A stretch of DNA of 64,000 bases from positions 124,001 through 188,000 of IMG/VR virus record IMGVR_UViG_3300035703_000006; one strand, given 5' to 3'. The position numbers and the translations under genes are program-made. The notes under the pieces are model-generated. The model was not told the origin of the DNA. It did not search any database and saw only the letters and a list, made by a program, of their open reading frames with translations. Below, piece after piece: positions 36,663 through 64,000 of the stretch; the stretch's first letter is position 1; every line of letters begins with the position of its first letter.

Positions 36663-36663
36663 A

Positions 36664-37017
36664 ATGGCAGTAGTAGCACTTAATACATTTAAAACAGTAA
36701 GGAAGTCATTAACAACTTCTAATGTTGGAATTTATACTTGTCCATCTGGAGTTGCTTCCATTGTAATTCTAGCACAAGTTACTAATGTTTCTGCAGGAAC
36801 AACTACTTATACAGTCTCTGCTGTTCATTCAAGAAGCACAGAATCTCCAACTGACTATAAATTTGCAAATAATGTCTCTGTTCCACCAAATGATTCCGTA
36901 AATTTAATTCCAGATGGAAGACTTGTTTTAGAGACAGGTGATGTTATCAAGGTTTCATCTAATTCAAATGATGAAATGAATATTGTATTAAGTGTTTTAG
37001 AAACTGCTAAGGGATAA
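36664..37017 (+). CDS. Small virion adaptor-like protein (module A)
   Basis: Paralog of 55251..55580 (LN.F.TV...IYT.P.G...V.LAQV.N). Confidence 0.8.
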   Translation: MAVVALNTFKTVRKSLTTSNVGIYTCPSGVASIVILAQVTNVSAGTTTYTVSAVHSRSTESPTDYKFANNVSVPPNDSVNLIPDGRLVLETGDVIKVSSNSNDEMNIVLSVLETAKG

Positions 37018-37022
37018 TTTAA

Positions 37023-38510: not shown

Positions 38511-41500
38511 ATGGCAGATAAAAGTTTCGGTTTAAATCAATTAAATTTTACTGGAATAGCAGGAACTTCATTAATTGAAAGTGAGAGTGGGTTGCAGATA
38601 AATTCACCTTCAGTTTCTATTAGTACTGATCTTTCTATTGGTGGAAAGGTTAATTCTAATTTAATTATTTCAAGTTCTTATTCTGTTGGCATTGGTTCTA
38701 CTCAACCACAACAAAAACTTGATGTTGTAGGAAATATAAACGTCTCAGGTTCCATAACCGCAACTTCTTTTGTCGGTTCTGGGACCAATCTCACTGGAGT
38801 AGCAAGAAATACCATAACAGCAATTGATGAGAATATTTATTATTATCCAATCTTTACTCCGTCAAATGCAAGTGCTGGAACTTATTCAACAATTGCAATA
38901 CCATCAGATAAAATTACTTATAATCCATCTGGTTTGATTGGAATTGGAACCAGTACTCCAAATTATAATATAGATGTTGTTGGGACTGGAAGATTTACAG
39001 GAAATTTAATTGCATCAACATTTATAGGTAGTTTAACTGGTACAGCAACCACTGCTTCCAGTTTAACGTCAACAGCAAGTGTCAATACATCAGGCATTAT
39101 AACTGCTTCTAGTTTTGTAGGTAACTTAACAGGTACAGCAACTGCAGCAGTTGGTTTAGGCACAACATCAAGTATTAATACTTCTGGTATTATAACTGCT
39201 TCTACTTTTGTAGGTAACTTAACAGGTACAGCAACTACAGCAACTTCTCTTGCCGATGCTTCTAATATTACCACAGGAACTATTAGTAGTTCTAGACTTA
39301 GTGGTTCTTATGGTATTTCTATAACAGGAACAGCAACTTCTCTTGCCGATGCTTCTAATATTACCACAGGAACTATTAGTAGTTCTAGACTTAGTGGTTC
39401 TTATGGTATTAATATTACTGGAACAGCAAATACTCTTGCTGATGCAGCAAACATAACTACTGGTACTATTAGTAGTTCTAGATTATCAGGGAGTTATGGA
39501 ATTTCTATAACAGGAACAGCAAATACTCTTGCTGATGCAGCAAACATAACTACTGGTACTATTAGTAGTTCTAGATTATCAGGGAGTTATGGAATTTCTA
39601 TAACAGGAACAGCAAATGCTCTTGATGATGCAGCAAACATAACTACTGGTACTATAAATTCATCAAGACTTAGTGGTTCTTATGGCATCAATATTACAGG
39701 AACAGCAGCTACAGCAACTACAGCACTTGGTGTATCAACAACAATTAATATCAACACTTCAGGTATCATAACTGCCACAACTTTTAGAGTTGGGACTAGT
39801 GCAACTGAATCAATTGGAATCACCACAAATATTATTAATGGTGGAAATTTATTACTTATAAATCCTGCTACAATTGGAGTTTCTACAGGAACAGTAAGGA
39901 TACTTGGAAACTTAATTGTTGAAGGAACTACATCTACTACTCAAGAATTAGTTTTAACTTCTAGTGATAAGCTCATTGCAATTGCAAGTACAGTTGGTAC
40001 TATTATTGATTTAGATGGGGCAGGAATAGGTATAGGATCTACATCAATAAGAAAGTTTATAAGATGGAATTATGGTTCAAGTTCTTTAAAATCTTCTGAA
40101 AACTGGAATTTAGATTCAGGAAAAGCATATCAAATCAATGACACTTCGGTTCTTACATCAACTGCCTTAGGTTCTGGTGTTACTATATCAAGTCTTAGAA
40201 GTGTTAGTTCTGGAATCATAACTGATAGAACGGAACTCACTTCAGGTCAAGTTTCTTCTGGTGATTATATATTAATTTACGACGTAAGTGATCCCACAAA
40301 CTTGAAGAAAGCAACAATACAAAATGCTGCACTTCAGGGACTTCAGGGAACACAGGGCACTCAAGGTGCTCAAGGACTTCAGGGAACACAGGGCACTCAA
40401 GGTGCTCAAGGACTTCAGGGAACACAGGGCACTCAAGGTGCTCAAGGAACACAAGGAACACAAGGAACACAAGGTCTTCAGGGTACTCAAGGTACACAAG
40501 GGACACAAGGTCTTCAGGGTACTCAAGGTACACAAGGGACACAAGGTCTTCAGGGTACTCAAGGTACACAAGGGACACAAGGTCTTCAGGGTACTCAAGG
40601 TACTCAGGGAACTCAAGGTACACAGGGAACTCAAGGAACACAGGGTACTCAAGGAACTCAAGGTACACAGGGAACTCAAGGTACACAGGGTACTCAAGGT
40701 CTCCAAGGTTTACAGGGCACACAGGGAACTCAAGGTACTCAAGGTCTCCAAGGAACTCAGGGCACTCAAGGTACTCAAGGAAGACAGGGAACTCAAGGAA
40801 GACAGGGAACTCAAGGTCTTCAGGGAACTAGTGGATCTAATGGAACTAGTGGTTCTTCTAATTGGATTCCAGTTTTAGTTAATGTAACGCAAGATTCTTC
40901 AAATCCATCAACATTTACAAAAACTGGAGCTGGAGGAACTGATGCAAATTGGGATGCTTCAGTTTATTCAGAGCAAGGTTTTGTTCTTGGTGCTTATGTG
41001 TCCACAAAAATATCATCAACAAGTGGAAGTGCCATAATTGGATTAGGAACTAATCCATCATTATCAAATGACACACTTATCAATTACGGATTATATCTTG
41101 ATAGTGGAACTTTGAAATCTATTGAAAATAACTCTCAAACTGGTCTTGGGACAACTTATGATATAACTGACGTTTTATCAGTTACTTATGATGGTGCAAA
41201 CGTTAGATATTATAAAAATTCATCTTTATTGAGAACTGTTTCTCGTTCTTTTGGTGATGCTTTATATTTGGATAGTTCTATCTATAGTACAGGTCTTGCC
41301 TTTAACAATCTTGTTTTTGGTCCCATGGGACCTCAGGGTACTCAAGGTCTCCAAGGTACTCAAGGAACTCAAGGTCTTCAGGGACTTCAAGGTACACAGG
41401 GAACTCAAGGAACTCAGGGAACTCAGGGAACTCAGGGAACTCAAGGTACACAGGGAACTCAAGGTCTCCAAGGTTTACAGGGAACTCAAGGAACTCAAGG

Positions 41501-42662
41501 TACTCAAGGAACTCAGGGTACTCAAGGAACTCAGGGTACTCAAGGAACTCAGGGTACTCAAGGAACTCAGGGTACTCAAGGAACTCAGGGTACTCAAGGA
41601 ACTCAGGGTACTCAGGGTCTCCAAGGTCTCCAAGGTTTACAGGGAACTCAAGGTACTCAAGGAACTCAAGGAACTCAAGGTACGCAGGGAACTCAAGGTC
41701 TCCAAGGTTTACAGGGAACTCAAGGTACTCAAGGAACTCAAGGTACTCAAGGAACTCAAGGTACTCAAGGAACTCAAGGTACTCAAGGTCTCCAAGGTTT
41801 ACAGGGAACTCAAGGTACTCAAGGAACTCAAGGAACTCAAGGAACTCAAGGTACACAGGGAACTCAAGGTACACAGGGAACTCAAGGTACACAGGGAACT
41901 CAAGGTACTCAAGGTCTCCAAGGTCTCCAAGGTTTACAGGGAACTCAAGGAACTCAAGGTACACAGGGAACTCAAGGTACACAGGGTACTCAAGGTACTC
42001 AAGGTTTACAAGGAACTCAAGGTACTCAAGGTCTCCAAGGTTTACAGGGAACTCAAGGAACTCAAGGAACTCAAGGAACTCAAGGAACTCAAGGAACTCA
42101 AGGAACTCAAGGAACTCAAGGAACTCAAGGAACTACTGGACCTGTGGCAGGTTCTGCAAATCAGATTGTTTACAAAGATTCATCAAATAATCCAACCAGT
42201 TCAAGTAGTTTGAGTTATATCGGCCCAGTTTCTGGAATCGGAACTCTAGGAATTGGAACCATCATTACAATCAAGCATAATGATACTTTAAATTCTGGAA
42301 CTTTAACTTTTGAGGGGTCTGCAGGTCAATTATTCACAATCACAAATAATCTCACTAGTGGTTCTATATTCTCAGTGGCAGATTCTTCTGGGATTCCCAG
42401 TATAGATGTAAATGCCGACGATACTGTTCTTTTAGCACCTTATAATGGAAATGTTGGTATAGGAACCACATTGCCACAAGCAAGAGTTCATATTGTTGGT
42501 AATACATTAATTACTGGTATTACAACTGTAGGTCTTGCAGATACTTCAACCCCCCCAAATAATTCTCAATTGAGTTTTGAACTTACTAGTAATACTAATC
42601 TAAGAATTAAAGTTCGTGGTACAGATGGAGTATTAAGATCAGCAAACATTACTCTTTCTTGA
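38511..42662 (+). CDS. Collagen-like tail fibre protein, 1383 aa
   Basis: 31-aa repeats, two G-X-Y blocks, an internal beta-rich domain, C-terminal LRIKVRGTDGVLRSANITLS. Confidence 0.88.
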   Translation: MADKSFGLNQLNFTGIAGTSLIESESGLQINSPSVSISTDLSIGGKVNSNLIISSSYSVGIGSTQPQQKLDVVGNINVSGSITATSFVGSGTNLTGVARNTITAIDENIYYYPIFTPSNASAGTYSTIAIPSDKITYNPSGLIGIGTSTPNYNIDVVGTGRFTGNLIASTFIGSLTGTATTASSLTSTASVNTSGIITASSFVGNLTGTATAAVGLGTTSSINTSGIITASTFVGNLTGTATTATSLADASNITTGTISSSRLSGSYGISITGTATSLADASNITTGTISSSRLSGSYGINITGTANTLADAANITTGTISSSRLSGSYGISITGTANTLADAANITTGTISSSRLSGSYGISITGTANALDDAANITTGTINSSRLSGSYGINITGTAATATTALGVSTTININTSGIITATTFRVGTSATESIGITTNIINGGNLLLINPATIGVSTGTVRILGNLIVEGTTSTTQELVLTSSDKLIAIASTVGTIIDLDGAGIGIGSTSIRKFIRWNYGSSSLKSSENWNLDSGKAYQINDTSVLTSTALGSGVTISSLRSVSSGIITDRTELTSGQVSSGDYILIYDVSDPTNLKKATIQNAALQGLQGTQGTQGAQGLQGTQGTQGAQGLQGTQGTQGAQGTQGTQGTQGLQGTQGTQGTQGLQGTQGTQGTQGLQGTQGTQGTQGLQGTQGTQGTQGTQGTQGTQGTQGTQGTQGTQGTQGTQGLQGLQGTQGTQGTQGLQGTQGTQGTQGRQGTQGRQGTQGLQGTSGSNGTSGSSNWIPVLVNVTQDSSNPSTFTKTGAGGTDANWDASVYSEQGFVLGAYVSTKISSTSGSAIIGLGTNPSLSNDTLINYGLYLDSGTLKSIENNSQTGLGTTYDITDVLSVTYDGANVRYYKNSSLLRTVSRSFGDALYLDSSIYSTGLAFNNLVFGPMGPQGTQGLQGTQGTQGLQGLQGTQGTQGTQGTQGTQGTQGTQGTQGLQGLQGTQGTQGTQGTQGTQGTQGTQGTQGTQGTQGTQGTQGTQGTQGTQGLQGLQGLQGTQGTQGTQGTQGTQGTQGLQGLQGTQGTQGTQGTQGTQGTQGTQGTQGLQGLQGTQGTQGTQGTQGTQGTQGTQGTQGTQGTQGTQGTQGLQGLQGLQGTQGTQGTQGTQGTQGTQGTQGLQGTQGTQGLQGLQGTQGTQGTQGTQGTQGTQGTQGTQGTQGTTGPVAGSANQIVYKDSSNNPTSSSSLSYIGPVSGIGTLGIGTIITIKHNDTLNSGTLTFEGSAGQLFTITNNLTSGSIFSVADSSGIPSIDVNADDTVLLAPYNGNVGIGTTLPQARVHIVGNTLITGITTVGLADTSTPPNNSQLSFELTSNTNLRIKVRGTDGVLRSANITLS
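39241..39705 (+). repeat. 93-bp (31-aa) tandem repeat x5
   Basis: A(T/N)(S/T/A)L(A/D)DA(S/A)NITTGTI(S/N)SSRLSGSYGI(S/N)ITGT; units start 39241, 39334, 39427, 39520, 39613. Confidence 0.92.
40338..40859 (+). repeat. Collagen-like G-X-Y block (58 triplets; GTQ/GLQ/GAQ)
   Basis: 9-bp degenerate tandem repeat. Confidence 0.95.
41319..42143 (+). repeat. Collagen-like G-X-Y block (about 91 triplets; GTQ/GLQ)
   Basis: 9-bp degenerate tandem repeat. Confidence 0.95.
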
Positions 42663-53460: not shown

Positions 53461-55248
53461 ATGGATAATATTAAAGTAAGAGTAGGAACAAATAATGCTA
53501 TAAAGGTAATTTCATCAAATTTTGCTGATGTAGTACAGATTAATTCTGATTATGTAGTTTCAAATATCTTATATGTCACAGAAGACGGAAATGATTCCAA
53601 CACAGGAAAAAAACTCGGAGAAGCAAAAGCAACTATCGCAGCAGCAGTTGGAATTGCAACAGAGGGAACTGTTATTAAAGTTAGTGCTGGAACTTACATA
53701 GAAAATAATCCAATTTCTTTACCAAAACAAATCAGTATTGTTGGAGACAATTTAAGAGAAGTTACAATTATTCCACAGAATGCAAATGCTGATTTATTTT
53801 ACGTCAATAATGGAAATTATATCTCAAACGTATCATTTTCTGGAAGTTTGAATGCAGGAAAGGCAGTCTTTGCATTTGACCCAACCAAACCAACTTATAT
53901 CAATCAATCACCTTACGTTCAAAATTGTACTAATTTTATTCCAAATAGTATTGGATTAAAAGTCGATGGGTCTAAAGCAATTGGACCAACTAAAAGTATG
54001 GTCTTAGACTCATATACTCAATATAATCAAAATGGAATTGGTGCTTCAATTACCAATGAAGGGTATGCACAATTAGTGTCCATGTTCACTATTTGTAATG
54101 ATACTGCAGTTTATTGTGGTTCTGGTGGCGGTTGTGATTTGACCAATTCCAATTCATCCTTTGGAAATTATGCTTTAGTTGCCGATGGAGTAAGTGCTAA
54201 AAAATATACAGGAATTGTTACTGTAGAAGCATCTGAAAATTCAGATACTTTTGTTTTAAATTTAAATACACCAACACTAAATGTTACAAATGCAGTTTAT
54301 GATAATGTGACTGGATTGACAACAATCACAGTCAGTCAAAGTCATAATTTTAATGTTGGAATGGGAGTTTCAATAAGTAATCTTATTTTCTCTTGTTCTT
54401 CGGGTGGTGGAGTTGCTGCTTTCCCATCAGGAAACAATGGTTATATTTTTGAAGTTGCAAATATTCCAACATCAACCTCCTTTGAAGTATATGTTGGGGT
54501 TTCCACAATTCAACATACTTATGTTTCCGGAGGAACTACAAAAGTAAATGCTGTTCGTCCATTTGATGGGCAAGTTGTTTATTTTGGACAATCCTATTAT
54601 ACAGTTGGAAGTGTGAACGTAAGTTCTGGTGGAACTGGTTATACTGGAAATACATCCGTTATATTTTCTTCACCCGAAACCTCTTGGGGGATACCTGCTT
54701 CTGGAATTGCTGAAGTTAAAAATGGATCTGTAACTAAAGTTGAAATTGTATCTTCAGGAAGAGGGTATGGTTCAACTCCTCCAACATTAACTTTTGGTTC
54801 TCCAAATGTTGGAATAAATACTGCAATAGGAGTTGCTAATTTGATTCCATCTTATTATACAATTCAAAGTTCTACCCCTATTGTTTCTGGAATTTGTACA
54901 ATCACTTTGAATGATAGTGTTCCATTTAATGTTGGTATTGGCACTACGACTTTCTTCTTTAAGCAAAGTCGCATTTTGGCATCAGGTCATTCATTTGAAT
55001 ATATTGGGTCAGGAACAAATATTGCATCTGCTTTACCTGTAACTGGTGGTGTTGCAATTCAAGAAAACGAAATTGATATGAGAAATGGTGGTCTTGTAGT
55101 GTATACTTCAACCGACCAATCTGGAAATTTTAGAATAGGAGATGGTGTTACAATCAATCAACAAACAGGAACAATTAGTGGAACATTTTATTCTAAGAGT
55201 TTGTTTTCATCTATGACACCATTCATTTTAGCATTAGGAGGAGAATAA
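53461..55248 (+). CDS. Tail fibre anchor protein (module B), paralog of the C-terminal half of 33231..36662
   Basis: PYVQNCTNFIPNSIGLKVDG, VLDSYTQYNQNG, ASGHSFEYIG, VYTSTDQSGNFRIG. Confidence 0.85.
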   Translation: MDNIKVRVGTNNAIKVISSNFADVVQINSDYVVSNILYVTEDGNDSNTGKKLGEAKATIAAAVGIATEGTVIKVSAGTYIENNPISLPKQISIVGDNLREVTIIPQNANADLFYVNNGNYISNVSFSGSLNAGKAVFAFDPTKPTYINQSPYVQNCTNFIPNSIGLKVDGSKAIGPTKSMVLDSYTQYNQNGIGASITNEGYAQLVSMFTICNDTAVYCGSGGGCDLTNSNSSFGNYALVADGVSAKKYTGIVTVEASENSDTFVLNLNTPTLNVTNAVYDNVTGLTTITVSQSHNFNVGMGVSISNLIFSCSSGGGVAAFPSGNNGYIFEVANIPTSTSFEVYVGVSTIQHTYVSGGTTKVNAVRPFDGQVVYFGQSYYTVGSVNVSSGGTGYTGNTSVIFSSPETSWGIPASGIAEVKNGSVTKVEIVSSGRGYGSTPPTLTFGSPNVGINTAIGVANLIPSYYTIQSSTPIVSGICTITLNDSVPFNVGIGTTTFFFKQSRILASGHSFEYIGSGTNIASALPVTGGVAIQENEIDMRNGGLVVYTSTDQSGNFRIGDGVTINQQTGTISGTFYSKSLFSSMTPFILALGGE

Positions 55249-55250
55249 GA

Positions 55251-55580
55251 ATGGCACTACCATTAAATGTATTCCAGACAGTTACCGCAGTTGTATCTAC
55301 AAGTCCAACGGAAGTTTATACTGCTCCAGTCGGGTATACTGGGGTTGTTCTTTTAGCACAAGTTGCAAATATTGGAGCATCATCTCAAGATATTACAATG
55401 CTCCATCGTAGAAGTGTAACTGATACTGAGATGTTAAAGGCATATCCAGTTGCGGGAAATGATACAATAAATCTTCTTTCTGGAAAATTGGTTCTTGAAA
55501 GTGGAGATAAATTAGTTATATCTGGTAGTAATGCAACTGATCTGAAACTTGTTGCAAGTATTTTAGAAACACTTAACTAA
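55251..55580 (+). CDS. Small virion adaptor-like protein (module B)
   Basis: Paralog of 36664..37017. Confidence 0.8.
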   Translation: MALPLNVFQTVTAVVSTSPTEVYTAPVGYTGVVLLAQVANIGASSQDITMLHRRSVTDTEMLKAYPVAGNDTINLLSGKLVLESGDKLVISGSNATDLKLVASILETLN

Positions 55581-55592
55581 TATTAAATAAAA

Positions 55593-58500
55593 ATGGCAAA
55601 GTACCTCAGCAATCGTCAAAAGAACTTTAAGATTGGTATAAGTTCTTATACAGAAGGAAAAACGGTACTTGAAGTTTCTGGAAATGTTGGCATTGGAACA
55701 ACAAATTCTGGTGGAAGAAGTTTATATGTAATTGGAGATGGTGAATTTACTGGCATTTTAACTGCAAATAGAATTTTTAGTTCAGTTTATGGTGAATTTA
55801 TAGGAGGAATAACAGGAACAAATATTGTAGGTACTTCATTATCTATTTCTGGAATTTCAACTCTCGGTATTACAAGTATTTCTCAACTTTATGTTTCTGG
55901 AATCACTACTTTAGCATCTGATGGTGGTATTACAACAACTGGTGGTAATTTATATGTTGGTCAGAATTTACAAGTTGCAGGAACTTCTAATTTTATAGGA
56001 ACTGCAATTTTTAGAGGTGGGACCATAGGAATTGGTGATTCGATTTCTGATAATATAGATGTTGGTGGTGAATTTATATCAAATTTAGTTCCAAGTGATG
56101 ATGGACTTTATGATCTTGGAATTGATGGAAAAAGATGGAGAAATGCAAAATTTTCTGATTTAACTACAACTACAGATCTTTATGTTTCTGGTGTTGGAAC
56201 TATACAAAACTTAGTTACAGCAAATGCAACATTAACTAATATTAATTCTACTGGAATTAGTACATTTGGGATTACTGAAATATCAGTTAATAGTTCTTCT
56301 AACGCATTAACGATCACTCAAACTGGATCTGGAAATGCTTTAGTTGTTCAACCAAATGCTAATGGTTTAGTTGTCACTGATAATGGATTTGTTGGAATTA
56401 GAAATTTAACTCCTGGAGAAGCACTTCAAGTTGGTGGAAATTTAAGAATAGGGTCTTCAGAGTCAAATTACATTGCATTCCGAGGGACTAGTGGAGATGG
56501 TGCCGGAGAATTTGATCATACTTATATTGGCGAAAGAGTTTATGAACCAGGCACAGAATTATCTGAACTTTTTATTTTTAAAGGAAATGATCCTGATACT
56601 CCATCGGTAGGTCCAGATAGAATTAGATTAGCCGCTGCAGAAATTAGATTAGATACTTATACTATAACCACACCATTATATGGTCCTTTTGAAGATGCTG
56701 CTACTTCAGTAAATTTAGACACAAGAGTCATTATAAAGGACCATGGATTTGTTGGCATAGGGACAACAGAACCATCAACACTTCTTGATGTATATGGTGG
56801 ATTTAATGTAAGTGGCATTGGAACTATAGCAACTTTAGATGTCACTACAGGTACTATTGATTACTTATCGGGAACTAATGTCTTTTGTAGTGGTATTACT
56901 ACCTTAGGCACTTTAGGTGTCACTGGTCTTACTACAACTCAAAATCTTCAAGTTATTGGAGTATCAACACTTGGAGTTACAAGTGCTACGAATCTAATAA
57001 CACAACAACTAAATGTCTCTGGAATTTCTACTTTTATTGGTGGAATTACTGGTACAATTTCTACAGCAACAAAATTAGAAAACTCTAGAACATTTGAAAT
57101 TACTGGTGATATTGTTGCATCACCAATTAGTTTTGATGGAACTGGTAATGTATCTTTAGCAGCAACAATACAACCAAATTCTGTTGCTTTGGGTGGTGAT
57201 ACTACTGGAGATTATGTTCAGATAATTTCTGGAACTGCAAATCAAATCACAATAACTGGTGGAACTGGAGAAAGTTCTACTCCAGTAGTTGCTTTTGCTC
57301 CAAATCCAACAATTCCAGGAAATGTAACAATTGGAAATGATTTGCAGGTTAATAATAATTTAAATGTAACAGGTAATATTACTGTTGGTGGAACAACTGG
57401 TTATATTATTGTTGAAGATTTTAGAGTCACTGATGCTGATATAACTCTTGGTTTTACGACTGATTCTTATGGAAATGATAATTCTACCGATACTACCGCA
57501 AATCATGGTGGTATTGCGATTGCGTCAACTGAAGGAAATCCTTTAGTTCAACTTGTTAATGTTGCAATTGGTGAATCATTACCTGCCACATACAAGAAAT
57601 TTATGTGGTTCAAGGCAGGTGCTTTTTCTGGACTGAATACAGATGCCTGGTTGAGCAATTATGCAATTGGTATTGGATCTACTCAGTTTCCATCAGGAAC
57701 AATACTTTCTGTTGGAAATGTTCAATTCAATCAAAATGATTTATCAGTTATAAGAAATATTAATGCTTCTGGTGTTGTAACCGCAACTAGATTCATTGGT
57801 ACTGCAACTAGTCTTGATATTGATGGTCTCACAACAATTGCTGATCCCCAAGGTAGTGATTTTATTGCACTTTATGATGTAAGTGGAGCAGTTGTAGGTA
57901 AAGCAACAATACAGAATGCAGCACTTCAGGGCACTCAAGGTACTCAAGGACTTCAAGGAACTCAGGGAACACAAGGAACTCAAGGAACCCAAGGTCTTCA
58001 GGGCACTCAAGGCACTCAAGGAACTCAAGGCACTCAGGGAACCCAAGGTCTTCAGGGAACCCAAGGTCTTCAGGGCACTCAAGGAACTCAAGGAACTCAA
58101 GGAACTCAAGGAACTCAAGGAACTCAAGGCACACAGGGTACTCAAGGAACTCAAGGAACTCAAGGTCTCCAGGGTACACAGGGCACACAGGGTACTCAAG
58201 GTACACAGGGTCTCCAGGGAACTCAAGGAACTCAAGGCACACAGGGCACTCAAGGTACACAGGGTCTCCAGGGAACTCAAGGAACTCAAGGCACACAGGG
58301 CACTCAAGGAACTCAAGGTCTCCAGGGAACTCAAGGAACTCAAGGAACACAGGGCACTCAAGGACTTCAAGGAACTCAAGGAACTCAAGGAACTCAAGGA
58401 ACACAGGGAACTCAAGGTACTCAAGGAACACAGGGCACACAGGGAACTCAAGGTCTCCAAGGAACTCAAGGAACTCAAGGAACTCAAGGAACTCAAGGTC

Positions 58501-61500
58501 TCCAGGGTACTCAGGGAACTCAAGGTACACAAGGAACTCAAGGTTTACAAGGACTTCAAGGAACTCAAGGAACACAGGGTACTCAAGGTACTCAAGGTAC
58601 TCAAGGAACTCAAGGTTTACAAGGTCTTCAGGGAACTCAAGGTCTTCAGGGAACTCAAGGTCTTCAGGGTACACAAGGAACTCAAGGAACTCAAGGAACT
58701 CAAGGAACTCAAGGTACTCAAGGTACACAAGGAACTCAAGGTACTCAAGGTACTCAAGGTACTCAAGGTACTCAAGGTACTCAAGGTACTCAAGGTACTC
58801 AGGGAACTACTGGACCAGTAGCAGGTTCTGCAAATCAAGTTGTTTACAAAGATGGTTCCAATAATCCCGCAGGTTCTAATAATTTAACTTTTGATGGAAC
58901 TGCTCTTTATGTAAATCAAATTACTGGACCAACAGAACTCATAATAGACCCAACTGCAATTGGAGATAATACAGGTGCAGTTAGAATTAAAGGCGATTTA
59001 TATGTTGATGGCAATCAAACTTATATTAATTCTACAACTATTGAACTTGCTGATTTCAATGTTGGTGTTGCTACAACAATAGGAACTAATTTACTTCTTG
59101 ATGGTGCTGGTATTGGAATTGGTTCTACTGGAATTCGTAAAACTTTAACTTATGATTATATAAATGATTCATTAAAATCGAGTGAAAATGTTAATATTGC
59201 TATAGGAAAAACTTATAAAATTGATGGAACTGATGTACTAAGTTCTACGACTCTTGGTGCTGGTGTAACTATTTCAAATATAAGAAGTGTAAATCCAGGA
59301 TTAATTTTTGATAGAACTACATATTCACCAACTTCAGATGATTATTTGTTAATTTATGATAATGCCGATAATCAACTGAAAAAAGCAACAATTCAAAATG
59401 CTGCTTTACAGGGTATTCAAGGTACTCAAGGTCTTCAAGGAACTCAAGGAACACAGGGTACTCAAGGTTTACAAGGTCTTCAGGGAACACAGGGCACTCA
59501 AGGAACTCAGGGAACTCAAGGTACTCAGGGAACTCAAGGTACACAAGGAACTCAAGGTTTACAAGGACTTCAAGGAACTCAAGGTACACAAGGAACTCAA
59601 GGTTTACAAGGACTTCAAGGAACTCAAGGTACACAAGGAACTCAAGGTACTCAAGGTACACAAGGAACTCAAGGTACTCAAGGTACTCAAGGTACTCAAG
59701 GTACTCAAGGAACTCAAGGTACACAAGGAACTCAAGGTACTCAAGGTACACAAGGAACTCAAGGTACTCAAGGTACTCAAGGTACTCAAGGTACTCAAGG
59801 AACTCAAGGTTTACAAGGTCTTCAGGGAACTCAAGGTCTTCAGGGAACTCAAGGTCTTCAGGGAACTCAAGGTACACAAGGAACTCAAGGTACACAAGGA
59901 ACTCAAGGTCTTCAAGGTCTTCAAGGACTTCAAGGCACTCAAGGAACACAGGGTACTCAAGGAACACAGGGTACTCAAGGTACTCAAGGACTTCAAGGTA
60001 CTCAAGGTACACAGGGAACTCAAGGAACTCAAGGTACACAGGGAACTCAAGGAACTCAAGGTACACAGGGAACTCAAGGTACACAGGGAACTCAAGGTAC
60101 ACAGGGAACTCAAGGAACTCAAGGAACTCAAGGTCTTCAAGGAACTCAAGGAACACAGGGTACTCAAGGTTTACAAGGTCTTCAGGGAACACAGGGCACT
60201 CAAGGAACTCAGGGAACTCAAGGTACTCAGGGAACTCAAGGTACACAAGGAACTCAAGGTTTACAAGGACTTCAAGGAACTCAAGGTACACAAGGAACTC
60301 AAGGTTTACAAGGACTTCAAGGAACTCAAGGTACACAGGGCACTCAAGGTACACAGGGCACTCAAGGTACACAGGGCACTCAAGGTACTCAAGGTACTCA
60401 AGGTACTCAAGGCACTCAAGGTACTCAAGGTACTCAAGGTACTCAAGGTACTCAAGGCACTCAAGGTACTCAAGGCACTCAAGGACTTCAAGGAACTCAA
60501 GGACTTCAAGGAACTCAAGGAACACAGGGAACTCAAGGTCTCCAAGGCACACAGGGCACACAGGGAACTCAAGGTCTCCAAGGTACTCAAGGAACTCAAG
60601 GAACTCAAGGTCTCCAGGGTACTCAAGGTACACAGGGAACTCAAGGAACTCAAGGTCTCCAGGGTACTCAGGGAACTCAAGGTACACAAGGAACTCAAGG
60701 TTTACAAGGACTTCAAGGAACTCAAGGAACACAGGGTACTCAAGGTACTCAAGGTACTCAAGGAACACAGGGCACACAGGGAACTCAAGGTCCCCAAGGT
60801 ACTCAAGGAACTCAAGGAACTCAAGGAACTCAAGGTCTTCAGGGAACTCAAGGAACTCAAGGAACTCAAGGAACTCAAGGTACACAAGGAACACAGGGTA
60901 CTCAAGGAACACAGGGTACTCAAGGTACTCAAGGTACTCAAGGAACACAGGGCACACAGGGAACTCAAGGTCTCCAAGGTACTCAAGGAACTCAAGGTCT
61001 TCAGGGAACTCAAGGAACTCAAGGAACTCAAGGTACACAAGGAACTCAAGGTATCACTGGGCCAGTAGCAGGTTCTGCAAATCAAATTATTTTCAAAGAC
61101 ATCTCCAATAATCCAACTGGTTCTGGTAATTTAACTTTTGATGGATCTAATCTTTATGTCGGTGGAAATGTAACGATTGGTGGTACTAGTGTTCTTATTG
61201 CTGCCAATACTTTAACTGTAAAAGATAAAGATATTATTGTTGGACTTGCAACAACTGCTGGTGGAGTTGTAATTTCCAATGACACAACAGCAAATCATGG
61301 TGGTATTGCTGTTGCTTCTACCGAAGGAAATCCACTAATTGATATTAATGCTGGTGTTGGTACTGATGATATTCCATCCACATATAAGCAACTTATGTGG
61401 ATTAAGGCAGGCACTTTTACTGGTTTGAATACTGATGCGTGGATATCAAACTATGCAGTTGGTGTTGGTACTTTTGATCTTTCCAATGGAGTAAGATTTG

Positions 61501-64000
61501 CCGCAGGTGGAATGAGAGTCAGTGATGACATTACAACTATCAATGCACTTGATGTAAATAAATTGTCTCCAAATGGCACTGATTTTGGTGCTGCATCTTA
61601 TGTTCCAATTGCAGATGGTGCAGGAAATTGGAGTTGGGGAACAGTAAGTGCTGCTGGTGCGGCAACAACAAACGCAATTAATATTAGAGATGAAAATACC
61701 CCACAAGGAAGTGCAACAACACTAAACTTTACTGGAGATGGTATAAGTGCATCGGTTGCATCTGGAACTGCGACTATAACTGTTAATACTATTCAAGGTC
61801 TTCAGGGAACTCAAGGTACTCAAGGATTTCAAGGAACTCAAGGAACTCAAGGAACTCAAGGAACTACAGGTACTCAAGGAACTACAGGTACTCAAGGTAC
61901 TCAAGGACTTCAAGGAACTCAAGGAACTACAGGTACTCAGGGAACTACAGGAACTCAAGGAACTACAGGAACTCAAGGAACTACAGGAACTCAGGGAACC
62001 ACAGGTACTCAAGGAACCACAGGTACTCAAGGAACTACAGGTACTCAGGGAACTACAGGAACTCAAGGAACTACAGGTACTCAAGGTACTCAAGGACTTC
62101 AAGGAACTCAAGGAACTACAGGAACTCAAGGAACTACAGGAACTCAAGGAACCACAGGTACTCAGGGAACTACAGGTACTCAGGGAACTACAGGTACTCA
62201 GGGAACTACAGGAACTCAAGGAACTACAGGTACTCAAGGAACTACAGGTACTCAGGGAACTACAGGAACTCAAGGTTTACAGGGTTTACAAGGAAGACAG
62301 GGAACTCAAGGAACTACAGGTACTCAAGGAACCACAGGTACTCAAGGAACCACAGGTACTCAAGGAACTACAGGTACTCAGGGAACTACAGGAACTACAG
62401 GTTTACAGGGTTTACAAGGAACTACAGGTACTCAGGGAACTACAGGAACTCAAGGAACTACAGGAACTCAAGGAACTACAGGAACTCAGGGAACCACAGG
62501 TACTCAAGGAACTACAGGAACTCAGGGAACCACAGGTACTCAAGGAACTACAGGTACTCAAGGAACTCAAGGTTTACAGGGTTTACAAGGAAGACAGGGA
62601 ACTCAAGGAACTACAGGTACTCAGGGAACTACAGGAACTCAAGGAACTACAGGAACTCAAGGAACTACAGGAACTCAGGGAACCACAGGTACTCAAGGAA
62701 CCACAGGTACTCAAGGAACTACAGGTACTCAGGGAACTACAGGAACTCAGGGAACCACAGGTACTCAAGGAACTACAGGAACTCAAGGTTTACAGGGTTT
62801 ACAAGGAACTACAGGAACTACAGGTACTCAAGGAACTACAGGTACTCAGGGAACTACAGGTACTCAGGGAACTACAGGTACTCAGGGAACTACAGGTACT
62901 CAAGGAACTACAGGAACTCAGGGAACTACAGGAACTCAAGGAACTACAGGTACTCAAGGTTTACAGGGTTTACAAGGAACTACAGGAACTACAGGTACTC
63001 AAGGAACTACAGGTACTCAGGGAACTACAGGTACTCAAGGAACTACAGGAACTCAGGGAACTACAGGAACTCAAGGAACTACAGGTACTCAAGGAACTAC
63101 AGGTACTCAAGGAACTACAGGTACTCAGGGAACTACAGGTACTCAGGGAACTACAGGTACTCAGGGAACTACAGGTACTCAAGGAACTACAGGTACTCAA
63201 GGAACTCAAGGTTTACAGGGTTTACAAGGAAGACAGGGAACTCAAGGAACTACAGGTACTCAAGGAACTACAGGTACTCAAGGAACTACAGGTACTCAAG
63301 GAACTACAGGTACTCAGGGAACTACAGGAACTCAAGGAACTACAGGAACTCAAGGAACTACAGGAACTCAGGGAACCACAGGTACTCAAGGAACTACAGG
63401 TACTCAAGGAACTACAGGAACTACAGGTTTACAGGGTTTACAAGGAACTACAGGAACTACAGGTACTCAAGGAACTACAGGTACTCAGGGAACTACAGGT
63501 ACTCAAGGAACTACAGGAACTCAGGGAACTACAGGAACTCAAGGAACTACAGGTACTCAAGGAACTACAGGTACTCAGGGAACTACAGGAACTCAGGGAA
63601 CCACAGGAACTCAGGGAACCACAGGAACAGGTACTCAGGGACTTCAGGGACTCCAAGGTCCTGCTGCCGCAGGAGGAGGTGGTGGTGGATCTTTAACGGT
63701 TATTGATGACACAACTACAAATGCTACTTGGTATGTTGGAGTTCTTTCTGTTACGGCAGGAACTGCTTCAACCATTCATACTTCATCTACAAAACTCAAC
63801 TTCAATCCAAGCACTGGAACGTTATCAGCAACAGTCTTTACATCTCTTTCTGACCAAACACAGAAAACAAATGTAAGAAAGATTGAAAATGCTTTAGAAA
63901 TAGTTAAAAAAATTGAAGGTGTAAAATATGAATGGATCGACAATCACAACCAACCCTCAATCGGTGTAATTGCTCAGGAAATTGAAAAAGTACTTCCTGA
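55593..64000 (+). CDS. Giant collagen-like tail fibre, >=2802 aa, 3' end beyond the window; C-terminal peptidase S74-type chaperone
   Basis: ATG 55593 (MAKYLSNRQK). All three collagen blocks and the terminal SDQTQKTNV...IGVIAQEIEKVLP are in the same frame. Absence from the ORF track is consistent with no stop before the window end. Confidence 0.9.
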   Translation, partial: MAKYLSNRQKNFKIGISSYTEGKTVLEVSGNVGIGTTNSGGRSLYVIGDGEFTGILTANRIFSSVYGEFIGGITGTNIVGTSLSISGISTLGITSISQLYVSGITTLASDGGITTTGGNLYVGQNLQVAGTSNFIGTAIFRGGTIGIGDSISDNIDVGGEFISNLVPSDDGLYDLGIDGKRWRNAKFSDLTTTTDLYVSGVGTIQNLVTANATLTNINSTGISTFGITEISVNSSSNALTITQTGSGNALVVQPNANGLVVTDNGFVGIRNLTPGEALQVGGNLRIGSSESNYIAFRGTSGDGAGEFDHTYIGERVYEPGTELSELFIFKGNDPDTPSVGPDRIRLAAAEIRLDTYTITTPLYGPFEDAATSVNLDTRVIIKDHGFVGIGTTEPSTLLDVYGGFNVSGIGTIATLDVTTGTIDYLSGTNVFCSGITTLGTLGVTGLTTTQNLQVIGVSTLGVTSATNLITQQLNVSGISTFIGGITGTISTATKLENSRTFEITGDIVASPISFDGTGNVSLAATIQPNSVALGGDTTGDYVQIISGTANQITITGGTGESSTPVVAFAPNPTIPGNVTIGNDLQVNNNLNVTGNITVGGTTGYIIVEDFRVTDADITLGFTTDSYGNDNSTDTTANHGGIAIASTEGNPLVQLVNVAIGESLPATYKKFMWFKAGAFSGLNTDAWLSNYAIGIGSTQFPSGTILSVGNVQFNQNDLSVIRNINASGVVTATRFIGTATSLDIDGLTTIADPQGSDFIALYDVSGAVVGKATIQNAALQGTQGTQGLQGTQGTQGTQGTQGLQGTQGTQGTQGTQGTQGLQGTQGLQGTQGTQGTQGTQGTQGTQGTQGTQGTQGTQGLQGTQGTQGTQGTQGLQGTQGTQGTQGTQGTQGLQGTQGTQGTQGTQGTQGLQGTQGTQGTQGTQGLQGTQGTQGTQGTQGTQGTQGTQGTQGTQGLQGTQGTQGTQGTQGLQGTQGTQGTQGTQGLQGLQGTQGTQGTQGTQGTQGTQGLQGLQGTQGLQGTQGLQGTQGTQGTQGTQGTQGTQGTQGTQGTQGTQGTQGTQGTQGTQGTQGTTGPVAGSANQVVYKDGSNNPAGSNNLTFDGTALYVNQITGPTELIIDPTAIGDNTGAVRIKGDLYVDGNQTYINSTTIELADFNVGVATTIGTNLLLDGAGIGIGSTGIRKTLTYDYINDSLKSSENVNIAIGKTYKIDGTDVLSSTTLGAGVTISNIRSVNPGLIFDRTTYSPTSDDYLLIYDNADNQLKKATIQNAALQGIQGTQGLQGTQGTQGTQGLQGLQGTQGTQGTQGTQGTQGTQGTQGTQGLQGLQGTQGTQGTQGLQGLQGTQGTQGTQGTQGTQGTQGTQGTQGTQGTQGTQGTQGTQGTQGTQGTQGTQGTQGTQGTQGTQGLQGLQGTQGLQGTQGLQGTQGTQGTQGTQGTQGLQGLQGLQGTQGTQGTQGTQGTQGTQGLQGTQGTQGTQGTQGTQGTQGTQGTQGTQGTQGTQGTQGTQGTQGTQGLQGTQGTQGTQGLQGLQGTQGTQGTQGTQGTQGTQGTQGTQGLQGLQGTQGTQGTQGLQGLQGTQGTQGTQGTQGTQGTQGTQGTQGTQGTQGTQGTQGTQGTQGTQGTQGTQGTQGLQGTQGLQGTQGTQGTQGLQGTQGTQGTQGLQGTQGTQGTQGLQGTQGTQGTQGTQGLQGTQGTQGTQGTQGLQGLQGTQGTQGTQGTQGTQGTQGTQGTQGPQGTQGTQGTQGTQGLQGTQGTQGTQGTQGTQGTQGTQGTQGTQGTQGTQGTQGTQGTQGLQGTQGTQGLQGTQGTQGTQGTQGTQGITGPVAGSANQIIFKDISNNPTGSGNLTFDGSNLYVGGNVTIGGTSVLIAANTLTVKDKDIIVGLATTAGGVVISNDTTANHGGIAVASTEGNPLIDINAGVGTDDIPSTYKQLMWIKAGTFTGLNTDAWISNYAVGVGTFDLSNGVRFAAGGMRVSDDITTINALDVNKLSPNGTDFGAASYVPIADGAGNWSWGTVSAAGAATTNAINIRDENTPQGSATTLNFTGDGISASVASGTATITVNTIQGLQGTQGTQGFQGTQGTQGTQGTTGTQGTTGTQGTQGLQGTQGTTGTQGTTGTQGTTGTQGTTGTQGTTGTQGTTGTQGTTGTQGTTGTQGTTGTQGTQGLQGTQGTTGTQGTTGTQGTTGTQGTTGTQGTTGTQGTTGTQGTTGTQGTTGTQGTTGTQGLQGLQGRQGTQGTTGTQGTTGTQGTTGTQGTTGTQGTTGTTGLQGLQGTTGTQGTTGTQGTTGTQGTTGTQGTTGTQGTTGTQGTTGTQGTTGTQGTQGLQGLQGRQGTQGTTGTQGTTGTQGTTGTQGTTGTQGTTGTQGTTGTQGTTGTQGTTGTQGTTGTQGTTGTQGLQGLQGTTGTTGTQGTTGTQGTTGTQGTTGTQGTTGTQGTTGTQGTTGTQGTTGTQGLQGLQGTTGTTGTQGTTGTQGTTGTQGTTGTQGTTGTQGTTGTQGTTGTQGTTGTQGTTGTQGTTGTQGTTGTQGTTGTQGTQGLQGLQGRQGTQGTTGTQGTTGTQGTTGTQGTTGTQGTTGTQGTTGTQGTTGTQGTTGTQGTTGTQGTTGTTGLQGLQGTTGTTGTQGTTGTQGTTGTQGTTGTQGTTGTQGTTGTQGTTGTQGTTGTQGTTGTQGTTGTGTQGLQGLQGPAAAGGGGGGSLTVIDDTTTNATWYVGVLSVTAGTASTIHTSSTKLNFNPSTGTLSATVFTSLSDQTQKTNVRKIENALEIVKKIEGVKYEWIDNHNQPSIGVIAQEIEKVLP
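57930..58817 (+). repeat. Collagen-like block 1 (about 98 triplets, GTQ/GLQ)
   Basis: 9-bp degenerate tandem repeat. Confidence 0.95.
59412..61064 (+). repeat. Collagen-like block 2 (about 183 triplets, GTQ/GLQ)
   Basis: 9-bp degenerate tandem repeat with long internal duplications. Confidence 0.95.
61797..63665 (+). repeat. Collagen-like block 3 (about 207 triplets, alternating GTQ-GTT)
   Basis: 18-bp degenerate tandem repeat; one register break (GT-GTQ) near 63627. Confidence 0.95.

What the first reader, a model, noticed from the sequence alone, without database searches (positions are those of the whole stretch)
55593..64000. Hidden >=2802-aa fibre with about 1470 residues of essentially proline-free collagen
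Seen: an ORF absent from the track because it has no stop in the window. Three G-X-Y blocks (about 98, 183 and 207 triplets) are almost all GTQ/GLQ/GTT, with Pro nearly absent, and are separated by repeated globular modules (two NHGGIA.ASTEGNP...NTDAW.SNYA units; one LDGAGIGIGST unit shared with 38511). An S74-type chaperone ends the protein. Established: collagen rises about 0.29 nm per residue, so the blocks alone would span roughly 400 nm; Thr-rich bacterial and viral collagens can be stabilised by glycosylation. Inference: an exceptionally long flexible capture filament, perhaps glycosylated, suited to dilute freshwater hosts.
Basis: partly seen in the sequence, partly recalled or inferred. 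Interest (0 to 1): 0.7.

Follow-up and report, generated by a model that had tools for sequence, protein, structure and literature searches.

The report
Giant proline-free collagen tail fibre
A freshwater cyanophage encodes a 2844-residue tail-fibre protein, half of it three very long collagen-type rods built almost only of Gly-Thr-Gln; fibres with collagen are ordinary in phages, but collagen with no proline and no charged residues is an undescribed variant that is common in phage metagenomes.

Summary
An ATG at 55593 opens a frame with no stop in the window. In the 247-kb parent contig it ends 127 nt further on, giving 2844 aa. It holds three uninterrupted G-X-Y tracts of 99, 184 and 204 triplets. 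These 1461 residues are T, G, Q and L, with only 3 Pro, 3 Arg and no Lys/Asp/Glu. Globular fibre modules separate the tracts, and a Peptidase_S74 intramolecular chaperone ends the protein (Ser2753/Lys2758). Gly codon positions 1-2 never vary while position 3 varies freely, so the periodicity is under selection. A trimer model of the C-terminal end is supported, with Gly-to-Gly contacts every third residue. The gene lies in a fibre cluster next to the baseplate hub of a psbA-carrying T4-like cyanophage related to S-SRM01. My reading is a trimeric, roughly 0.45-0.5 µm, jointed collagen tail fibre for long-reach host capture. It is not unique: (GTQ)8 runs occur in more than 116 viral-contig stretches, one ORF with 721 triplets. 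None of 120 closest relatives of the N-terminal part has collagen; 4 of 145 linker relatives have short tracts. Exact tract lengths are unverified, and glycosylation and the 'dilute host' idea are untested. It is a new variant of a known kind.

The parts
55593..64000 (+). Fibre gene. The window holds codons 1-2802. The full gene has 2844 codons and ends 127 nt beyond the window (genome 179593-188127).
55593..57929 (+). Non-collagen N-terminal part (aa 1-779). It contains the N-terminal anchor (aa 1-~290, shared at the N-terminus of relatives and with S-SRM01 gp331) and a beta-rich shaft that includes the first NHGGIA module (aa 571-757).
57930..58820 (+). Collagen tract 1: 99 triplets (GTQ 80, GLQ 17), about 85 nm.
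58821..59411 (+). Linker node 1 (aa 1077-1273). It comprises a post-collagen cap AGSANQ..KD.SNNP.GS.NLTFDG, the LDGAGIGIGST module, and a pre-collagen cap YD...KATIQNAALQ.
59412..61067 (+). Collagen tract 2: 184 triplets (GTQ 147, GLQ 33), about 158 nm.
61068..61796 (+). Linker node 2 (aa 1826-2068): the post-collagen cap plus the second NHGGIA module (aa 1840-1998).
61797..63632 (+). Collagen tract 3: 204 triplets (GTQ 94, GTT 88, GLQ 17), about 175 nm. A one-residue register slip and three more triplets follow.
63633..63848 (+). Distal tip (aa 2681-2752): three more triplets, a Gly-rich hinge and a short beta tip. This would be the C-terminus of the mature fibre and is the candidate receptor-binding end.
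63849..64000 (+). Start of the Peptidase_S74 intramolecular chaperone (Ser2753 codon at 63849, Lys2758). The 92-aa domain continues beyond the window.
53461..55248 (+). Upstream cassette partner: a 595-aa beta-helix (pectin-lyase-like) fibre/spike protein (phrog_17885). It is syntenic with S-SRM01 gp329.
55251..55580 (+). Upstream cassette partner: a small 109-aa protein (phrog_1276). It is syntenic with S-SRM01 gp330 and has a paralogue at 36664-37017.
38511..42662 (+). Second fibre gene with the same Pro-free GTQ/GLQ collagen (58 + 92 triplets) and the same pre-collagen module.

Best explanation
This is the gene for a very long homotrimeric tail fibre of a freshwater T4-like cyanophage (Kyanoviridae-like, related to S-SRM01).

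Architecture: an N-terminal anchor and beta-rich shaft (aa 1-779) are followed by three collagen triple-helical rods of about 85, 158 and 175 nm. Two globular nodes join the rods. The fibre ends in a short beta tip.

Folding: a C-terminal S74 intramolecular chaperone (aa 2753-2844) brings the three chains together in register. It would nucleate C-to-N zipping of the last rod and then cut itself off at Ser2753, using the Ser2753/Lys2758 dyad. That leaves a mature chain of about 270 kDa. The conserved caps flanking each tract probably re-nucleate and register the other rods.

Collagen type: the helix is of an unusual type, G-(T/L)-(Q/T), with no imino acids and no charged pairs. It must rest on Gly packing plus polar Thr/Gln hydration or side-chain hydrogen bonding, and on sheer length.

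Function: in this fibre family the collagen rods replace the usual beta-repeat shaft modules. The result is a thin, jointed, semi-flexible tether of roughly 0.45-0.5 µm that enlarges the capture radius for first, reversible contact with the host surface. It would work like the S74-chaperoned side fibres of T5 and S16.

Shown: ORF, composition, selection on Gly, S74 domain and motif, gene context, recurrence in other phages. Supported by a model only: the trimer and the Gly-core contacts. Inferred: triple helix in vivo, cleavage, length, attachment to the baseplate, capture role.
For: - Complete 2844-aa ORF.
- Strict G-X-Y for 99/184/204 triplets. Pfam Collagen scores 170 and 316 bits against a cut-off of 27.
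- Gly codon positions 1-2 have zero entropy over 487 units, while position 3 has 0.93-1.41 bits. Repeats are only 77-80% alike at DNA level. This indicates purifying selection, not a fresh slippage array.
- S74: Pfam E=2.5e-16, the S-D-x-x-x-K motif, and a match to the chaperone end of the phage S16 long tail fibre, PDB 6F45, E=8.7e-6.
- Trimer model of aa 2591-2844: score 0.92 against a best control of 0.00. That mark was reached by 21 of 30 solved homo-pairs and 0 of 23 single chains. Runs agree in at least 91% of contacts and pLDDT is at least 69. Confident inter-chain contacts in the collagen part fall on every third residue, 2594...2627, which are the Gly positions.
- Context: tube, hub, gp29-like and gp5-like genes at 20.6-29.9 kb are followed by a run of fibre genes. 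A second S74-ended fibre is at 43308-50981.
- The genome has psbA/psbD-type genes, and its nearest record is S-SRM01.
- The N-terminal anchor is shared with relatives whose shafts are non-collagen.
- Orthologous layout in an independent sample: L037/L114 is colinear at ~74% nt, with a 174-triplet tract where ours has 184.
- All unique junctions are reproduced with 0 mismatches in other samples' contigs.
Against: - There is no direct evidence that the protein is in virions, is trimeric, or is triple-helical. The phage is uncultured (one JGI contig).
- Imino-free, charge-free sequences lack both accepted stabilisers of non-hydroxylated collagens (PMC11923368, PMC8968730). From memory of host-guest studies, Thr is a poor X-position residue, so stability is an open question.
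- The trimer model gave confident collagen contacts for only two of the three chains and only about 12 triplets.
- The anchor has no recognisable homology to T4 fibre or baseplate proteins. An atlas lead to gp9/10_N scored only 0.88. Attachment to the baseplate is therefore inferred from gene position only.
- The mature tip is only about 60 residues, so the receptor-binding part is uncertain.
Confidence: 0.65

Rival explanations
1. The fibre gene is real, but the tract lengths are assembly artefacts. Repeat collapse, expansion or chimerism between co-occurring strains produced the 99/184/204 figures, so the true fibre is substantially shorter or longer.
For: - The gene is on a single metagenome contig.
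- It has exact internal duplicates of 200-249 nt.
- Related phages with ~79% identical tracts occur in the same sample (L081).
- k=31 contigs show many 'joints' inside the tracts.
Against: - Repeats are imperfect (77-80%), which gives an assembler many anchors.
- The frame stays open through 8.5 kb.
- Orthologues from other samples have tracts of the same scale at the same position (174 vs 184). Tracts of 185, 188, 189 and 203 occur elsewhere.
- For the neighbouring collagen fibre, tract lengths are reproduced almost exactly in independent contigs: 58/92 here against 58/93, 59/102 and 58/103.
Confidence: 0.2
2. The protein is a virion fibre but not a tail fibre. It would be a neck whisker, or a capsid-attached filament used for decoration, adhesion to particles or mucilage, or sensing, rather than the primary host-capture organ.
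For: - The N-terminal anchor shows no detectable homology to T4 gp34 or gp9/10 sockets.
- The collagen shaft is too flexible to transmit a triggering signal. The same argument was made for phi24B gp61 (bioRxiv 10.64898/2026.04.10.717836).
- The phage has several other fibre genes that could serve as the true receptor-binding fibres.
Against: - The gene lies in a contiguous block that starts with the baseplate hub genes.
- PHROG matches are all to tail and baseplate categories.
- S74-chaperoned proteins of known location are tail fibres or spikes (6F45).
Confidence: 0.15
3. The G-X-Y tracts do not form a collagen triple helix. They would be hydrated, disordered spacers ('entropic bristles'), or they would fold into polyglycine-II/PPII helix bundles like those of the S16 gp38 adhesin or snow-flea antifreeze protein.
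For: - Pro and charged pairs are absent.
- The trimer model gives only partial confidence in the collagen part.
- PPII-bundle domains made of Gly-rich triplets do exist in phage fibre tips (bioRxiv 10.1101/2023.11.25.568672, listed).
Against: - Disorder would not require an invariant Gly at every third residue across 487 units under synonymous drift.
- PPII bundles need regular turns every 6-10 residues, whereas these tracts run 297-612 residues without a break.
- The tracts are flanked by trimer-forming modules.
- The model's contacts fall exactly on the Gly positions.
Confidence: 0.08
4. One reading: the collagen is O-glycosylated on Thr by phage-encoded glycosyltransferases, and this is what stabilises the proline-free helix.
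For: - Thr is 34% of tract residues, including 90 Thr at the Y position, nearly all in tract 3.
- The genome encodes a GT2-methyltransferase fusion, a sulfotransferase and further GT-like genes.
- Galactosylated Gly-Pro-Thr peptides become triple-helical, and BclA is glycosylated (PMC11923368, PMC8968730).
Against: - The same GT/sulfotransferase cluster is present in S-SRM01, which has no G-x-Q tract.
- No GT gene is adjacent to either collagen gene.
- 411 of 501 tract Thr are at X, where no stabilising glycosylation is known.
- Tracts 1 and 2 have Gln, not Thr, at Y.
Confidence: 0.25

Closest known systems
Collagen-like phage tail fibres: 'bacteriophage collagen' (Smith et al. 1998), P-SSM2 orf028, E. 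coli prophage EPclA, phi24B gp61
   Same: They are trimeric phage side or tail fibres whose shaft is a G-X-Y tract flanked by trimerising domains. Cyanomyovirus fibre genes with large G-X-Y fractions have been known since 2005 (PMC1079782). The flexible collagen shaft with a small C-terminal tip matches phi24B gp61.
   Different: The known examples are Pro-rich and/or charged. EPclA has Pro in about half of the X positions and ~22% charged residues (PMC3368898). P-SSM2 has X/Y often P/S/T. Their shafts are also far shorter, about 100 triplets or fewer. Here Pro is 0.2%, K/D/E are zero, Y is Gln in 81% of triplets, and the tracts reach 204 triplets (487 in all).
S74 intramolecular-chaperone fibres and spikes: phage S16 gp37 (PDB 6F45), T5 L-shaped fibre pb1, K1F endosialidase
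   Same: All share a C-terminal Peptidase_S74 domain with the Ser/Lys dyad motif, a predicted trimer, and a short beta tip directly before the cleavage site. The likely role is reversible first contact that speeds adsorption (T5 pb1, from memory).
   Different: In those proteins the shaft is a beta-structure, not collagen. Sequence similarity is limited to the last ~145 residues.
Giant modular fibres of cyanomyoviruses (phrog_1469 family; S-SKS1 SWZG_00010; S-SRM01 gp331-gp334)
   Same: They share the N-terminal anchor, the NHGGIA and linker modules (55-85% identity), often the S74 end, and the position beside the beta-helix and small-protein genes.
   Different: None of the 120 closest relatives has a G-X-Y tract of 6 or more triplets. 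Only 4 of 145 linker-module relatives have one, and those are short, at most 17 triplets. S-SRM01 splits the equivalents over four genes and has no G-x-Q tract.
Thr-rich bacterial collagens such as Bacillus BclA (exosporium hair-like nap)
   Same: Both are long hair-like surface filaments made of Thr-rich, hydroxyproline-free collagen with a C-terminal trimerising domain.
   Different: BclA is built of GPT triplets (Pro at X, Thr at Y), is glycosylated, and ends in a C1q/TNF-like domain. Here Thr is at X, Gln is at Y, there is no Pro, and the end is S74.

Membership tests
Collagen triple-helix repeat (Pfam PF01391) | Gly at every third residue over long uninterrupted runs | tested here: met
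   99, 184 and 204 consecutive triplets. Gly codon positions 1-2 are invariant.
Collagen triple-helix repeat (Pfam PF01391) | Profile score above the curated cut-off | tested here: met
   170.2 and 315.9 bits against a cut-off of 27.2.
Collagen triple-helix repeat (Pfam PF01391) | Adjacent trimerisation/registration domain | tested here: met
   S74 domain and beta tip are predicted as an intertwined trimer, score 0.92 vs control 0.00. Conserved caps flank the tracts.
Collagen triple-helix repeat (Pfam PF01391) | Stabilisers typical of known collagens: imino acids at X/Y, or KGE/KGD-type salt bridges | tested here: not met
   3 Pro and 0 Lys/Asp/Glu in 1461 residues. Compare PMC11923368 and PMC3368898.
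Collagen triple-helix repeat (Pfam PF01391) | Physical triple helix (CD maximum near 220-225 nm, cooperative melting, protease resistance) | not testable with these tools
   Only a model is available: inter-chain contacts at Gly positions 2594-2627.
Peptidase_S74 intramolecular chaperone (PF13884) | Profile match above cut-off at the extreme C-terminus | tested here: met
   60.1 bits against a cut-off of 22, E=2.5e-16, aa 2753-2806.
Peptidase_S74 intramolecular chaperone (PF13884) | Catalytic Ser and Lys five residues apart (S-D-x-x-x-K) | tested here: met
   Ser2753 and Lys2758. The motif aligns with that of S16 gp37, 6F45.
Peptidase_S74 intramolecular chaperone (PF13884) | Autocleavage and release after trimer folding | not testable with these tools
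   This needs protein expression or virion proteomics.
T4-type long tail fibre (gp34-gp37) | Homology of shaft or anchor to gp34/gp36/gp37 | tested here: not met
   No Pfam hit in aa 1-779 or in the linkers. No PDB sequence hit. The only similarity is in the C-terminal chaperone.
Modular cyanomyovirus fibre family (phrog_1469 and relatives) | Shared anchor and shaft modules, and synteny with the beta-helix and small-protein genes | tested here: met
   phrog_1469 E=2e-28. 328 relatives were found, and the NHGGIA module is in 113 of the best 120. Synteny holds with S-SRM01 gp329-gp331.
BclA-type glycosylated collagen | GPT triplets and a C1q/TNF-like C-terminal domain | tested here: not met
   The triplets are GTQ/GLQ/GTT, and the C-terminus is S74.

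The most novel reading that the evidence does not exclude
The G-(T/L/I/V)-Q tracts define a distinct natural class of collagen triple helix, widespread in aquatic phages. It would fold and stay folded with neither imino acids nor salt bridges nor (for Thr at X) glycosylation, using a third mechanism such as Gln/Thr side-chain hydrogen-bond or hydration ladders. That would be a counter-example to the proposed universal salt-bridge 'folding code'. Its rod lengths (recurrent ~184-189 and ~203 triplets in unrelated contigs) would act as selected molecular rulers that set fibre reach.
Probability: 0.35. Interest if true: 0.75.

Novelty: new variant of a known kind. Interest (0 to 1): 0.5.

Why it matters
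Collagen biophysics currently explains the stability of non-hydroxylated triple helices in three ways: imino acids, Lys-Asp/Glu salt bridges, or glycosylated Thr at the Y position. This fibre carries up to 204 uninterrupted triplets with none of the first two, and the third is at best available in one tract. So do dozens of other phage ORFs found here.

If these tracts are triple-helical, they are a ready-made natural test of what minimally holds a collagen helix together. They are also a source of uncharged, proline-free designer collagens.

For phage biology, the finding shows that a family of modular cyanophage fibres can replace its beta-repeat shaft with collagen rods. That gives about half a micrometre of reach at a low coding and mass cost per nanometre, which bears on encounter rates with sparse or sheathed freshwater picocyanobacteria.

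Tried and rejected
- AF2 monomer model of the NHGGIA module from a 39-sequence alignment: pLDDT 62, pTM 0.30. This is too poor for a fold search, so none was run.
- PDB sequence searches with the N-terminal 779 aa and with linker 1: nothing significant.
- Atlas look-up of aa 1-300: generic viral fibre clusters only. A T4 gp9/10_N lead scored 0.88, below reliability.
- Laying public contigs inside the tracts: k=31 contigs shatter and fit several places, so they say nothing about length.
- Exact-protein look-up: only the source contig carries it.
- Idea that the downstream TPR/2OG-oxygenase/sulfotransferase/GT cluster is a dedicated collagen-modification system: rejected as specific evidence. 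S-SRM01 has the same cluster and no G-x-Q collagen.
- Idea that the array is a recent slippage expansion: rejected on codon-position entropy and 77-80% unit identity.
- Long ORFs in other frames or on the minus strand inside the tracts (e.g. 59317-61038 minus, 573 aa): by-products of stop-free repeats.
- Literature searches for G-T-Q or Gln-rich phage collagen: nothing relevant found.
Full report
**1. Observation**

Translating window 55593-64000 in frame 1 gives 2802 codons with no stop. An in-frame stop lies at 55584, and the ATG at 55593 is the first start. The ORF is missing from the mechanical ORF list only because it runs off the window.

The window is bases 124001-188000 of a single 247,112-bp contig with 34% GC. 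There the frame closes with TAA at 188127, giving a 2844-aa product. JGI's own gene call on the source contig (sample 3300035703) is the same 2844-aa product, with no Pfam hit on record. An open frame of this length is expected by chance at about 1e-84 or less.

**2. The collagen tracts**

There are three uninterrupted G-X-Y runs:
- aa 780-1076: 99 triplets.
- aa 1274-1825: 184 triplets.
- aa 2069-2680: 204 triplets. Three further triplets follow a one-residue register slip, GTT-GTG-TQG.

The 1461 tract residues are T 501, G 488, Q 394, L 67, P 3, R 3, with no Lys, Asp or Glu. The X position is Thr (84%) or Leu (14%). The Y position is Gln (81%) or Thr (18%, nearly all in tract 3). Pfam's Collagen model scores 170 and 316 bits against a 27-bit cut-off.

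At DNA level the units are only 77-80% alike, with 13-19 different 9-mers per tract and mixed synonymous codons. Gly codon positions 1 and 2 have zero entropy over all 487 units, while position 3 has 0.93-1.41 bits. The Gly periodicity is therefore kept by selection. It is not the residue of a recent slippage burst.

The tracts raise local GC to 47-50%. They also create long spurious ORFs in other frames and on the other strand.

**3. The non-collagen parts**

The C-terminal 92 residues are a Peptidase_S74 intramolecular chaperone:
- Pfam E=2.5e-16, and many tail-fibre PHROGs match.
- The S-D-x-x-x-K motif is present at Ser2753/Lys2758.
- The domain aligns to the chaperone end of the phage S16 long tail fibre, PDB 6F45.

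Only about 50 of these residues lie inside the window. Cleavage at Ser2753 would leave a 2752-aa (~270 kDa) chain. Its last ~60 residues, after a Gly-rich hinge, form the distal tip.

A three-copy model of aa 2591-2844 supports a trimer:
- The score is 0.92 against a best control of 0.00. That mark was reached by 21 of 30 solved homo-pairs and 0 of 23 single chains.
- The runs agree in at least 91% of contacts, and pLDDT is at least 69.
- Confident contacts run through the tip and the chaperone.
- In the collagen part, contacts fall on residues 2594, 2597 ... 2627, exactly the Gly positions. That pattern is the signature of a Gly-core triple helix.
- Limits: this held for two of the three chains and about 12 triplets, and it is a model, not a measurement.

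- aa 571-757 and aa 1840-1998 are 43% identical.
- The first ~42 residues after tracts 1 and 2 are 61% identical.
- aa 1108-1273 is 52% identical to aa 440-609 of the neighbouring ORF 38511-42662. In both proteins this module directly precedes a collagen tract.
- The flanks form conserved caps, YD...KATIQNAALQ before a tract and AGSANQ..KD.SNNP.GS.NLTFDG after it. Several unrelated viral contigs carry the same caps.

Both globular modules are shuffled building blocks of a large fibre family:
- The NHGGIA module occurs in 113 of the 120 best relatives, at positions from residue 139 to 1755.
- The linker module occurs in 2887 representative clusters, 230 of them at E<=1e-30.

**4. Context**

The genome carries two Photo_RC (psbA/psbD-type) genes. 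Its nearest record is the freshwater cyanomyovirus S-SRM01 of the Kyanoviridae.

Upstream in the window lie tube-like, hub, gp29-like and gp5-like genes, at 20.6-29.9 kb. A run of fibre genes follows. It includes a second S74-ended fibre of 2557 aa and a second collagen fibre at 38511-42662 (58 + 92 triplets of the same type).

A cassette of 'beta-helix protein, small ~110-aa protein, then fibre' occurs twice: 33231/36664/37023... and 53461/55251/55593. It is syntenic with S-SRM01 gp329-gp331.

S-SRM01 itself has no (G-x-x-Q) run of six or more. It spreads the equivalents of this protein over gp331-gp334.

**5. How unusual is it?**

Within its own family it is very unusual:
- None of the 120 closest large relatives of the N-terminal part (1565-3613 aa) has a G-X-Y tract of six or more triplets. 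They build the shaft from other repeat modules.
- Only 4 of 145 relatives of the linker module have any tract, and those have at most 17 triplets.

As a kind of sequence it is not rare:
- The 131 ORFs recovered have a median Pro fraction of 0.2% and Gln at Y in 80% of triplets.
- 42 ORFs have at least 100 triplets.
- One complete 2656-aa ORF has 721 triplets with no Pro, another has 619, and one tract has at least 283 triplets.
- Contigs L037/L114 and L030 share the linker modules (64-68% identity) and the overall layout: COL>=129-[210 aa]-COL174-[244 aa]-COL73.

So this fibre is at the top end for single tracts. Its 184 and 204 triplets fall among the longest ~3% of complete tracts in that set. 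It is not the record.

**6. Reliability of the lengths**

The longest exact internal duplicates are 200-249 nt, which is a risk for short-read assembly. Public contigs from other samples, one at ~850-900x depth, reproduce every unique junction with no mismatch: 57500-57962, 58779-59453, 61024-61855 and 63590-64000. They break up inside the tracts.

Indirect support comes from two observations:
- L037, from another sample, aligns colinearly at ~74% nt, with a 174-triplet tract where this gene has 184.
- The neighbouring fibre's tracts (58/92) recur as 58/93, 59/102 and 58/103 in independent contigs.

I put about a one-in-five chance on the stated lengths being materially wrong.

**7. Mechanism**

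The best-supported reading is a homotrimeric tail fibre. Its features are these:
- It has an N-terminal anchor and a beta-rich shaft.
- It has three collagen rods, about 85, 158 and 175 nm at 0.286 nm per residue. The rise per residue is established for collagen; its application here is inference.
- It has two globular nodes that act as joints and as re-registration points.
- It has a small distal tip.

With the non-collagen parts the fibre would be roughly 0.45-0.5 µm long, about three times a T4 long tail fibre (that comparison is from memory).

Folding would start at the S74 chaperone, which aligns the chains and then removes itself. This follows established behaviour of S74 domains in endosialidase, T5 pb1 and S16 gp37. 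The helix would then zip C-to-N, as described for collagens in PMC11923368.

The function I infer is long-reach, reversible first contact. A shaft this flexible is unlikely to carry a mechanical trigger. The same point was made for the collagen-shafted gp61 of phi24B. The receptor-binding element may be the ~60-residue tip, the nodes, or an accessory protein.

**8. Comparison with known collagens**

Characterised phage and bacterial collagens are explained by three stabilisers:
- Pro at X (EPclA, PMC3368898).
- Charged pairs. KGE/KGD is proposed as a universal code, and KGD makes up 13% of viral triplets (PMC11923368).
- Glycosylated Thr at Y (BclA; Gly-Pro-Thr peptides; PMC8968730, PMC11923368).

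These tracts have none of the first two. Thr at Y is present only in tract 3. I found no paper describing this compositional class. The held library lacks many subscription papers. My recollection that Rasmussen et al. 2003 noted Thr/Gln-rich viral motifs is unverified.

**9. Glycosylation**

Candidate enzymes exist:
- A GT2-methyltransferase fusion at genome 201754-203286.
- A sulfotransferase.
- A 2OG-Fe(II) oxygenase next to a TPR protein.
- GT-like genes near genome 103-111 kb.

All have counterparts in collagen-free S-SRM01, and none is adjacent to a collagen gene. The idea remains open but unsupported.

**10. Verdict**

The fibre, collagen and S74 reading is supported. 'Exceptional' needs tempering, and the glycosylation and ecological claims are untested. 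The finding is a new variant of a known kind. Its main value is as a natural, recurrent example of imino-free, charge-free collagen.

Noticed in passing
window 38511-42662 (+): This is a second fibre gene (1383 aa) with 58 + 92 triplets of the same Pro-free GTQ/GLQ collagen. Orthologues in about 10 independent IMG/VR contigs have nearly the same tract lengths (58/93, 59/102, 58/103), which suggests that tract length is conserved.
   Followed up: partly
window 33231-38465 and 53461-55592 (+): A cassette is duplicated: a pectin-lyase-like beta-helix protein (51-59% id between copies), then a small 109-117-aa protein of unknown function (phrog_1276, 38% id), then a fibre gene. The same pair sits next to collagen fibre genes in about 20 loci that were fetched only by the (GTQ)8 pattern. 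The small protein could be a fibre adaptor or chaperone.
   Followed up: partly
L001:9121-10311 (genome 188120-189310), just past the window end: A 396-aa RCC1-repeat beta-propeller gene overlaps the fibre's stop codon by 8 nt. Further RCC1 proteins follow (1159 aa and 399 aa). S-SRM01 likewise has an RCC1 gene right after its S74-ended fibre. It is a candidate accessory adhesin or tip partner, but this was not tested.
   Followed up: no
genome 193495-203286 (L120), 5-15 kb downstream of the window: A cluster holds a TPR protein, a 2OG-Fe(II) oxygenase (81% id to S-SRM01 gp339), an RCC1 protein, a sulfotransferase and a GT2-methyltransferase fusion. A TPR protein next to an oxygenase recalls substrate-binding domains of protein hydroxylases. 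The cluster is shared with collagen-free S-SRM01.
   Followed up: partly
window 63615-63650 (aa 2675-2690); also loci: A one-residue register slip, GTT-GTG-TQG, lies close to the C-terminal end of tract 3. The identical motif recurs near tract ends in several otherwise different IMG/VR ORFs, so it may be a functional stagger or kink element.
   Followed up: no
loci L059, L005, L081, L026, L109 and window tract 2: Long tracts in unrelated contigs cluster at 184-189 triplets: 184, 185, 188, 188, 189, 189, plus cut tracts of at least 184 and at least 187. Others are at 174 and 203-204. This may be a preferred rod length (~160 nm) or an assembly effect.
   Followed up: no
window 43308-50981 (+): A 2557-aa fibre gene without collagen also ends in a Peptidase_S74 chaperone (E=2e-19). 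Its N-terminus matches 'tail fiber/short tail fiber' PHROGs, so the phage has at least two S74-matured giant fibres.
   Followed up: partly
window 138-1010 and 3939-4808 (+): Two Photo_RC genes (psbA/psbD type, E=1e-90 and 1e-74) mark the genome as a cyanophage.
   Followed up: partly
window 57744-62273, other frames and minus strand: Long ORFs listed inside the collagen tracts (for example 59317-61038 minus, 573 aa, and 59398-61068 plus, 556 aa) are artefacts of stop-free repeats, not genes.
   Followed up: yes
L059 (IMGVR_UViG_3300005581_000014) and L005: A complete 2656-aa ORF has six G-(T/I/Q)-Q tracts totalling 721 triplets and no Pro. The tracts are separated by regular 58-aa spacers, and the C-terminus is distantly S74-like (34% id). 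It is a longer and more regular example of the same collagen class.
   Followed up: partly
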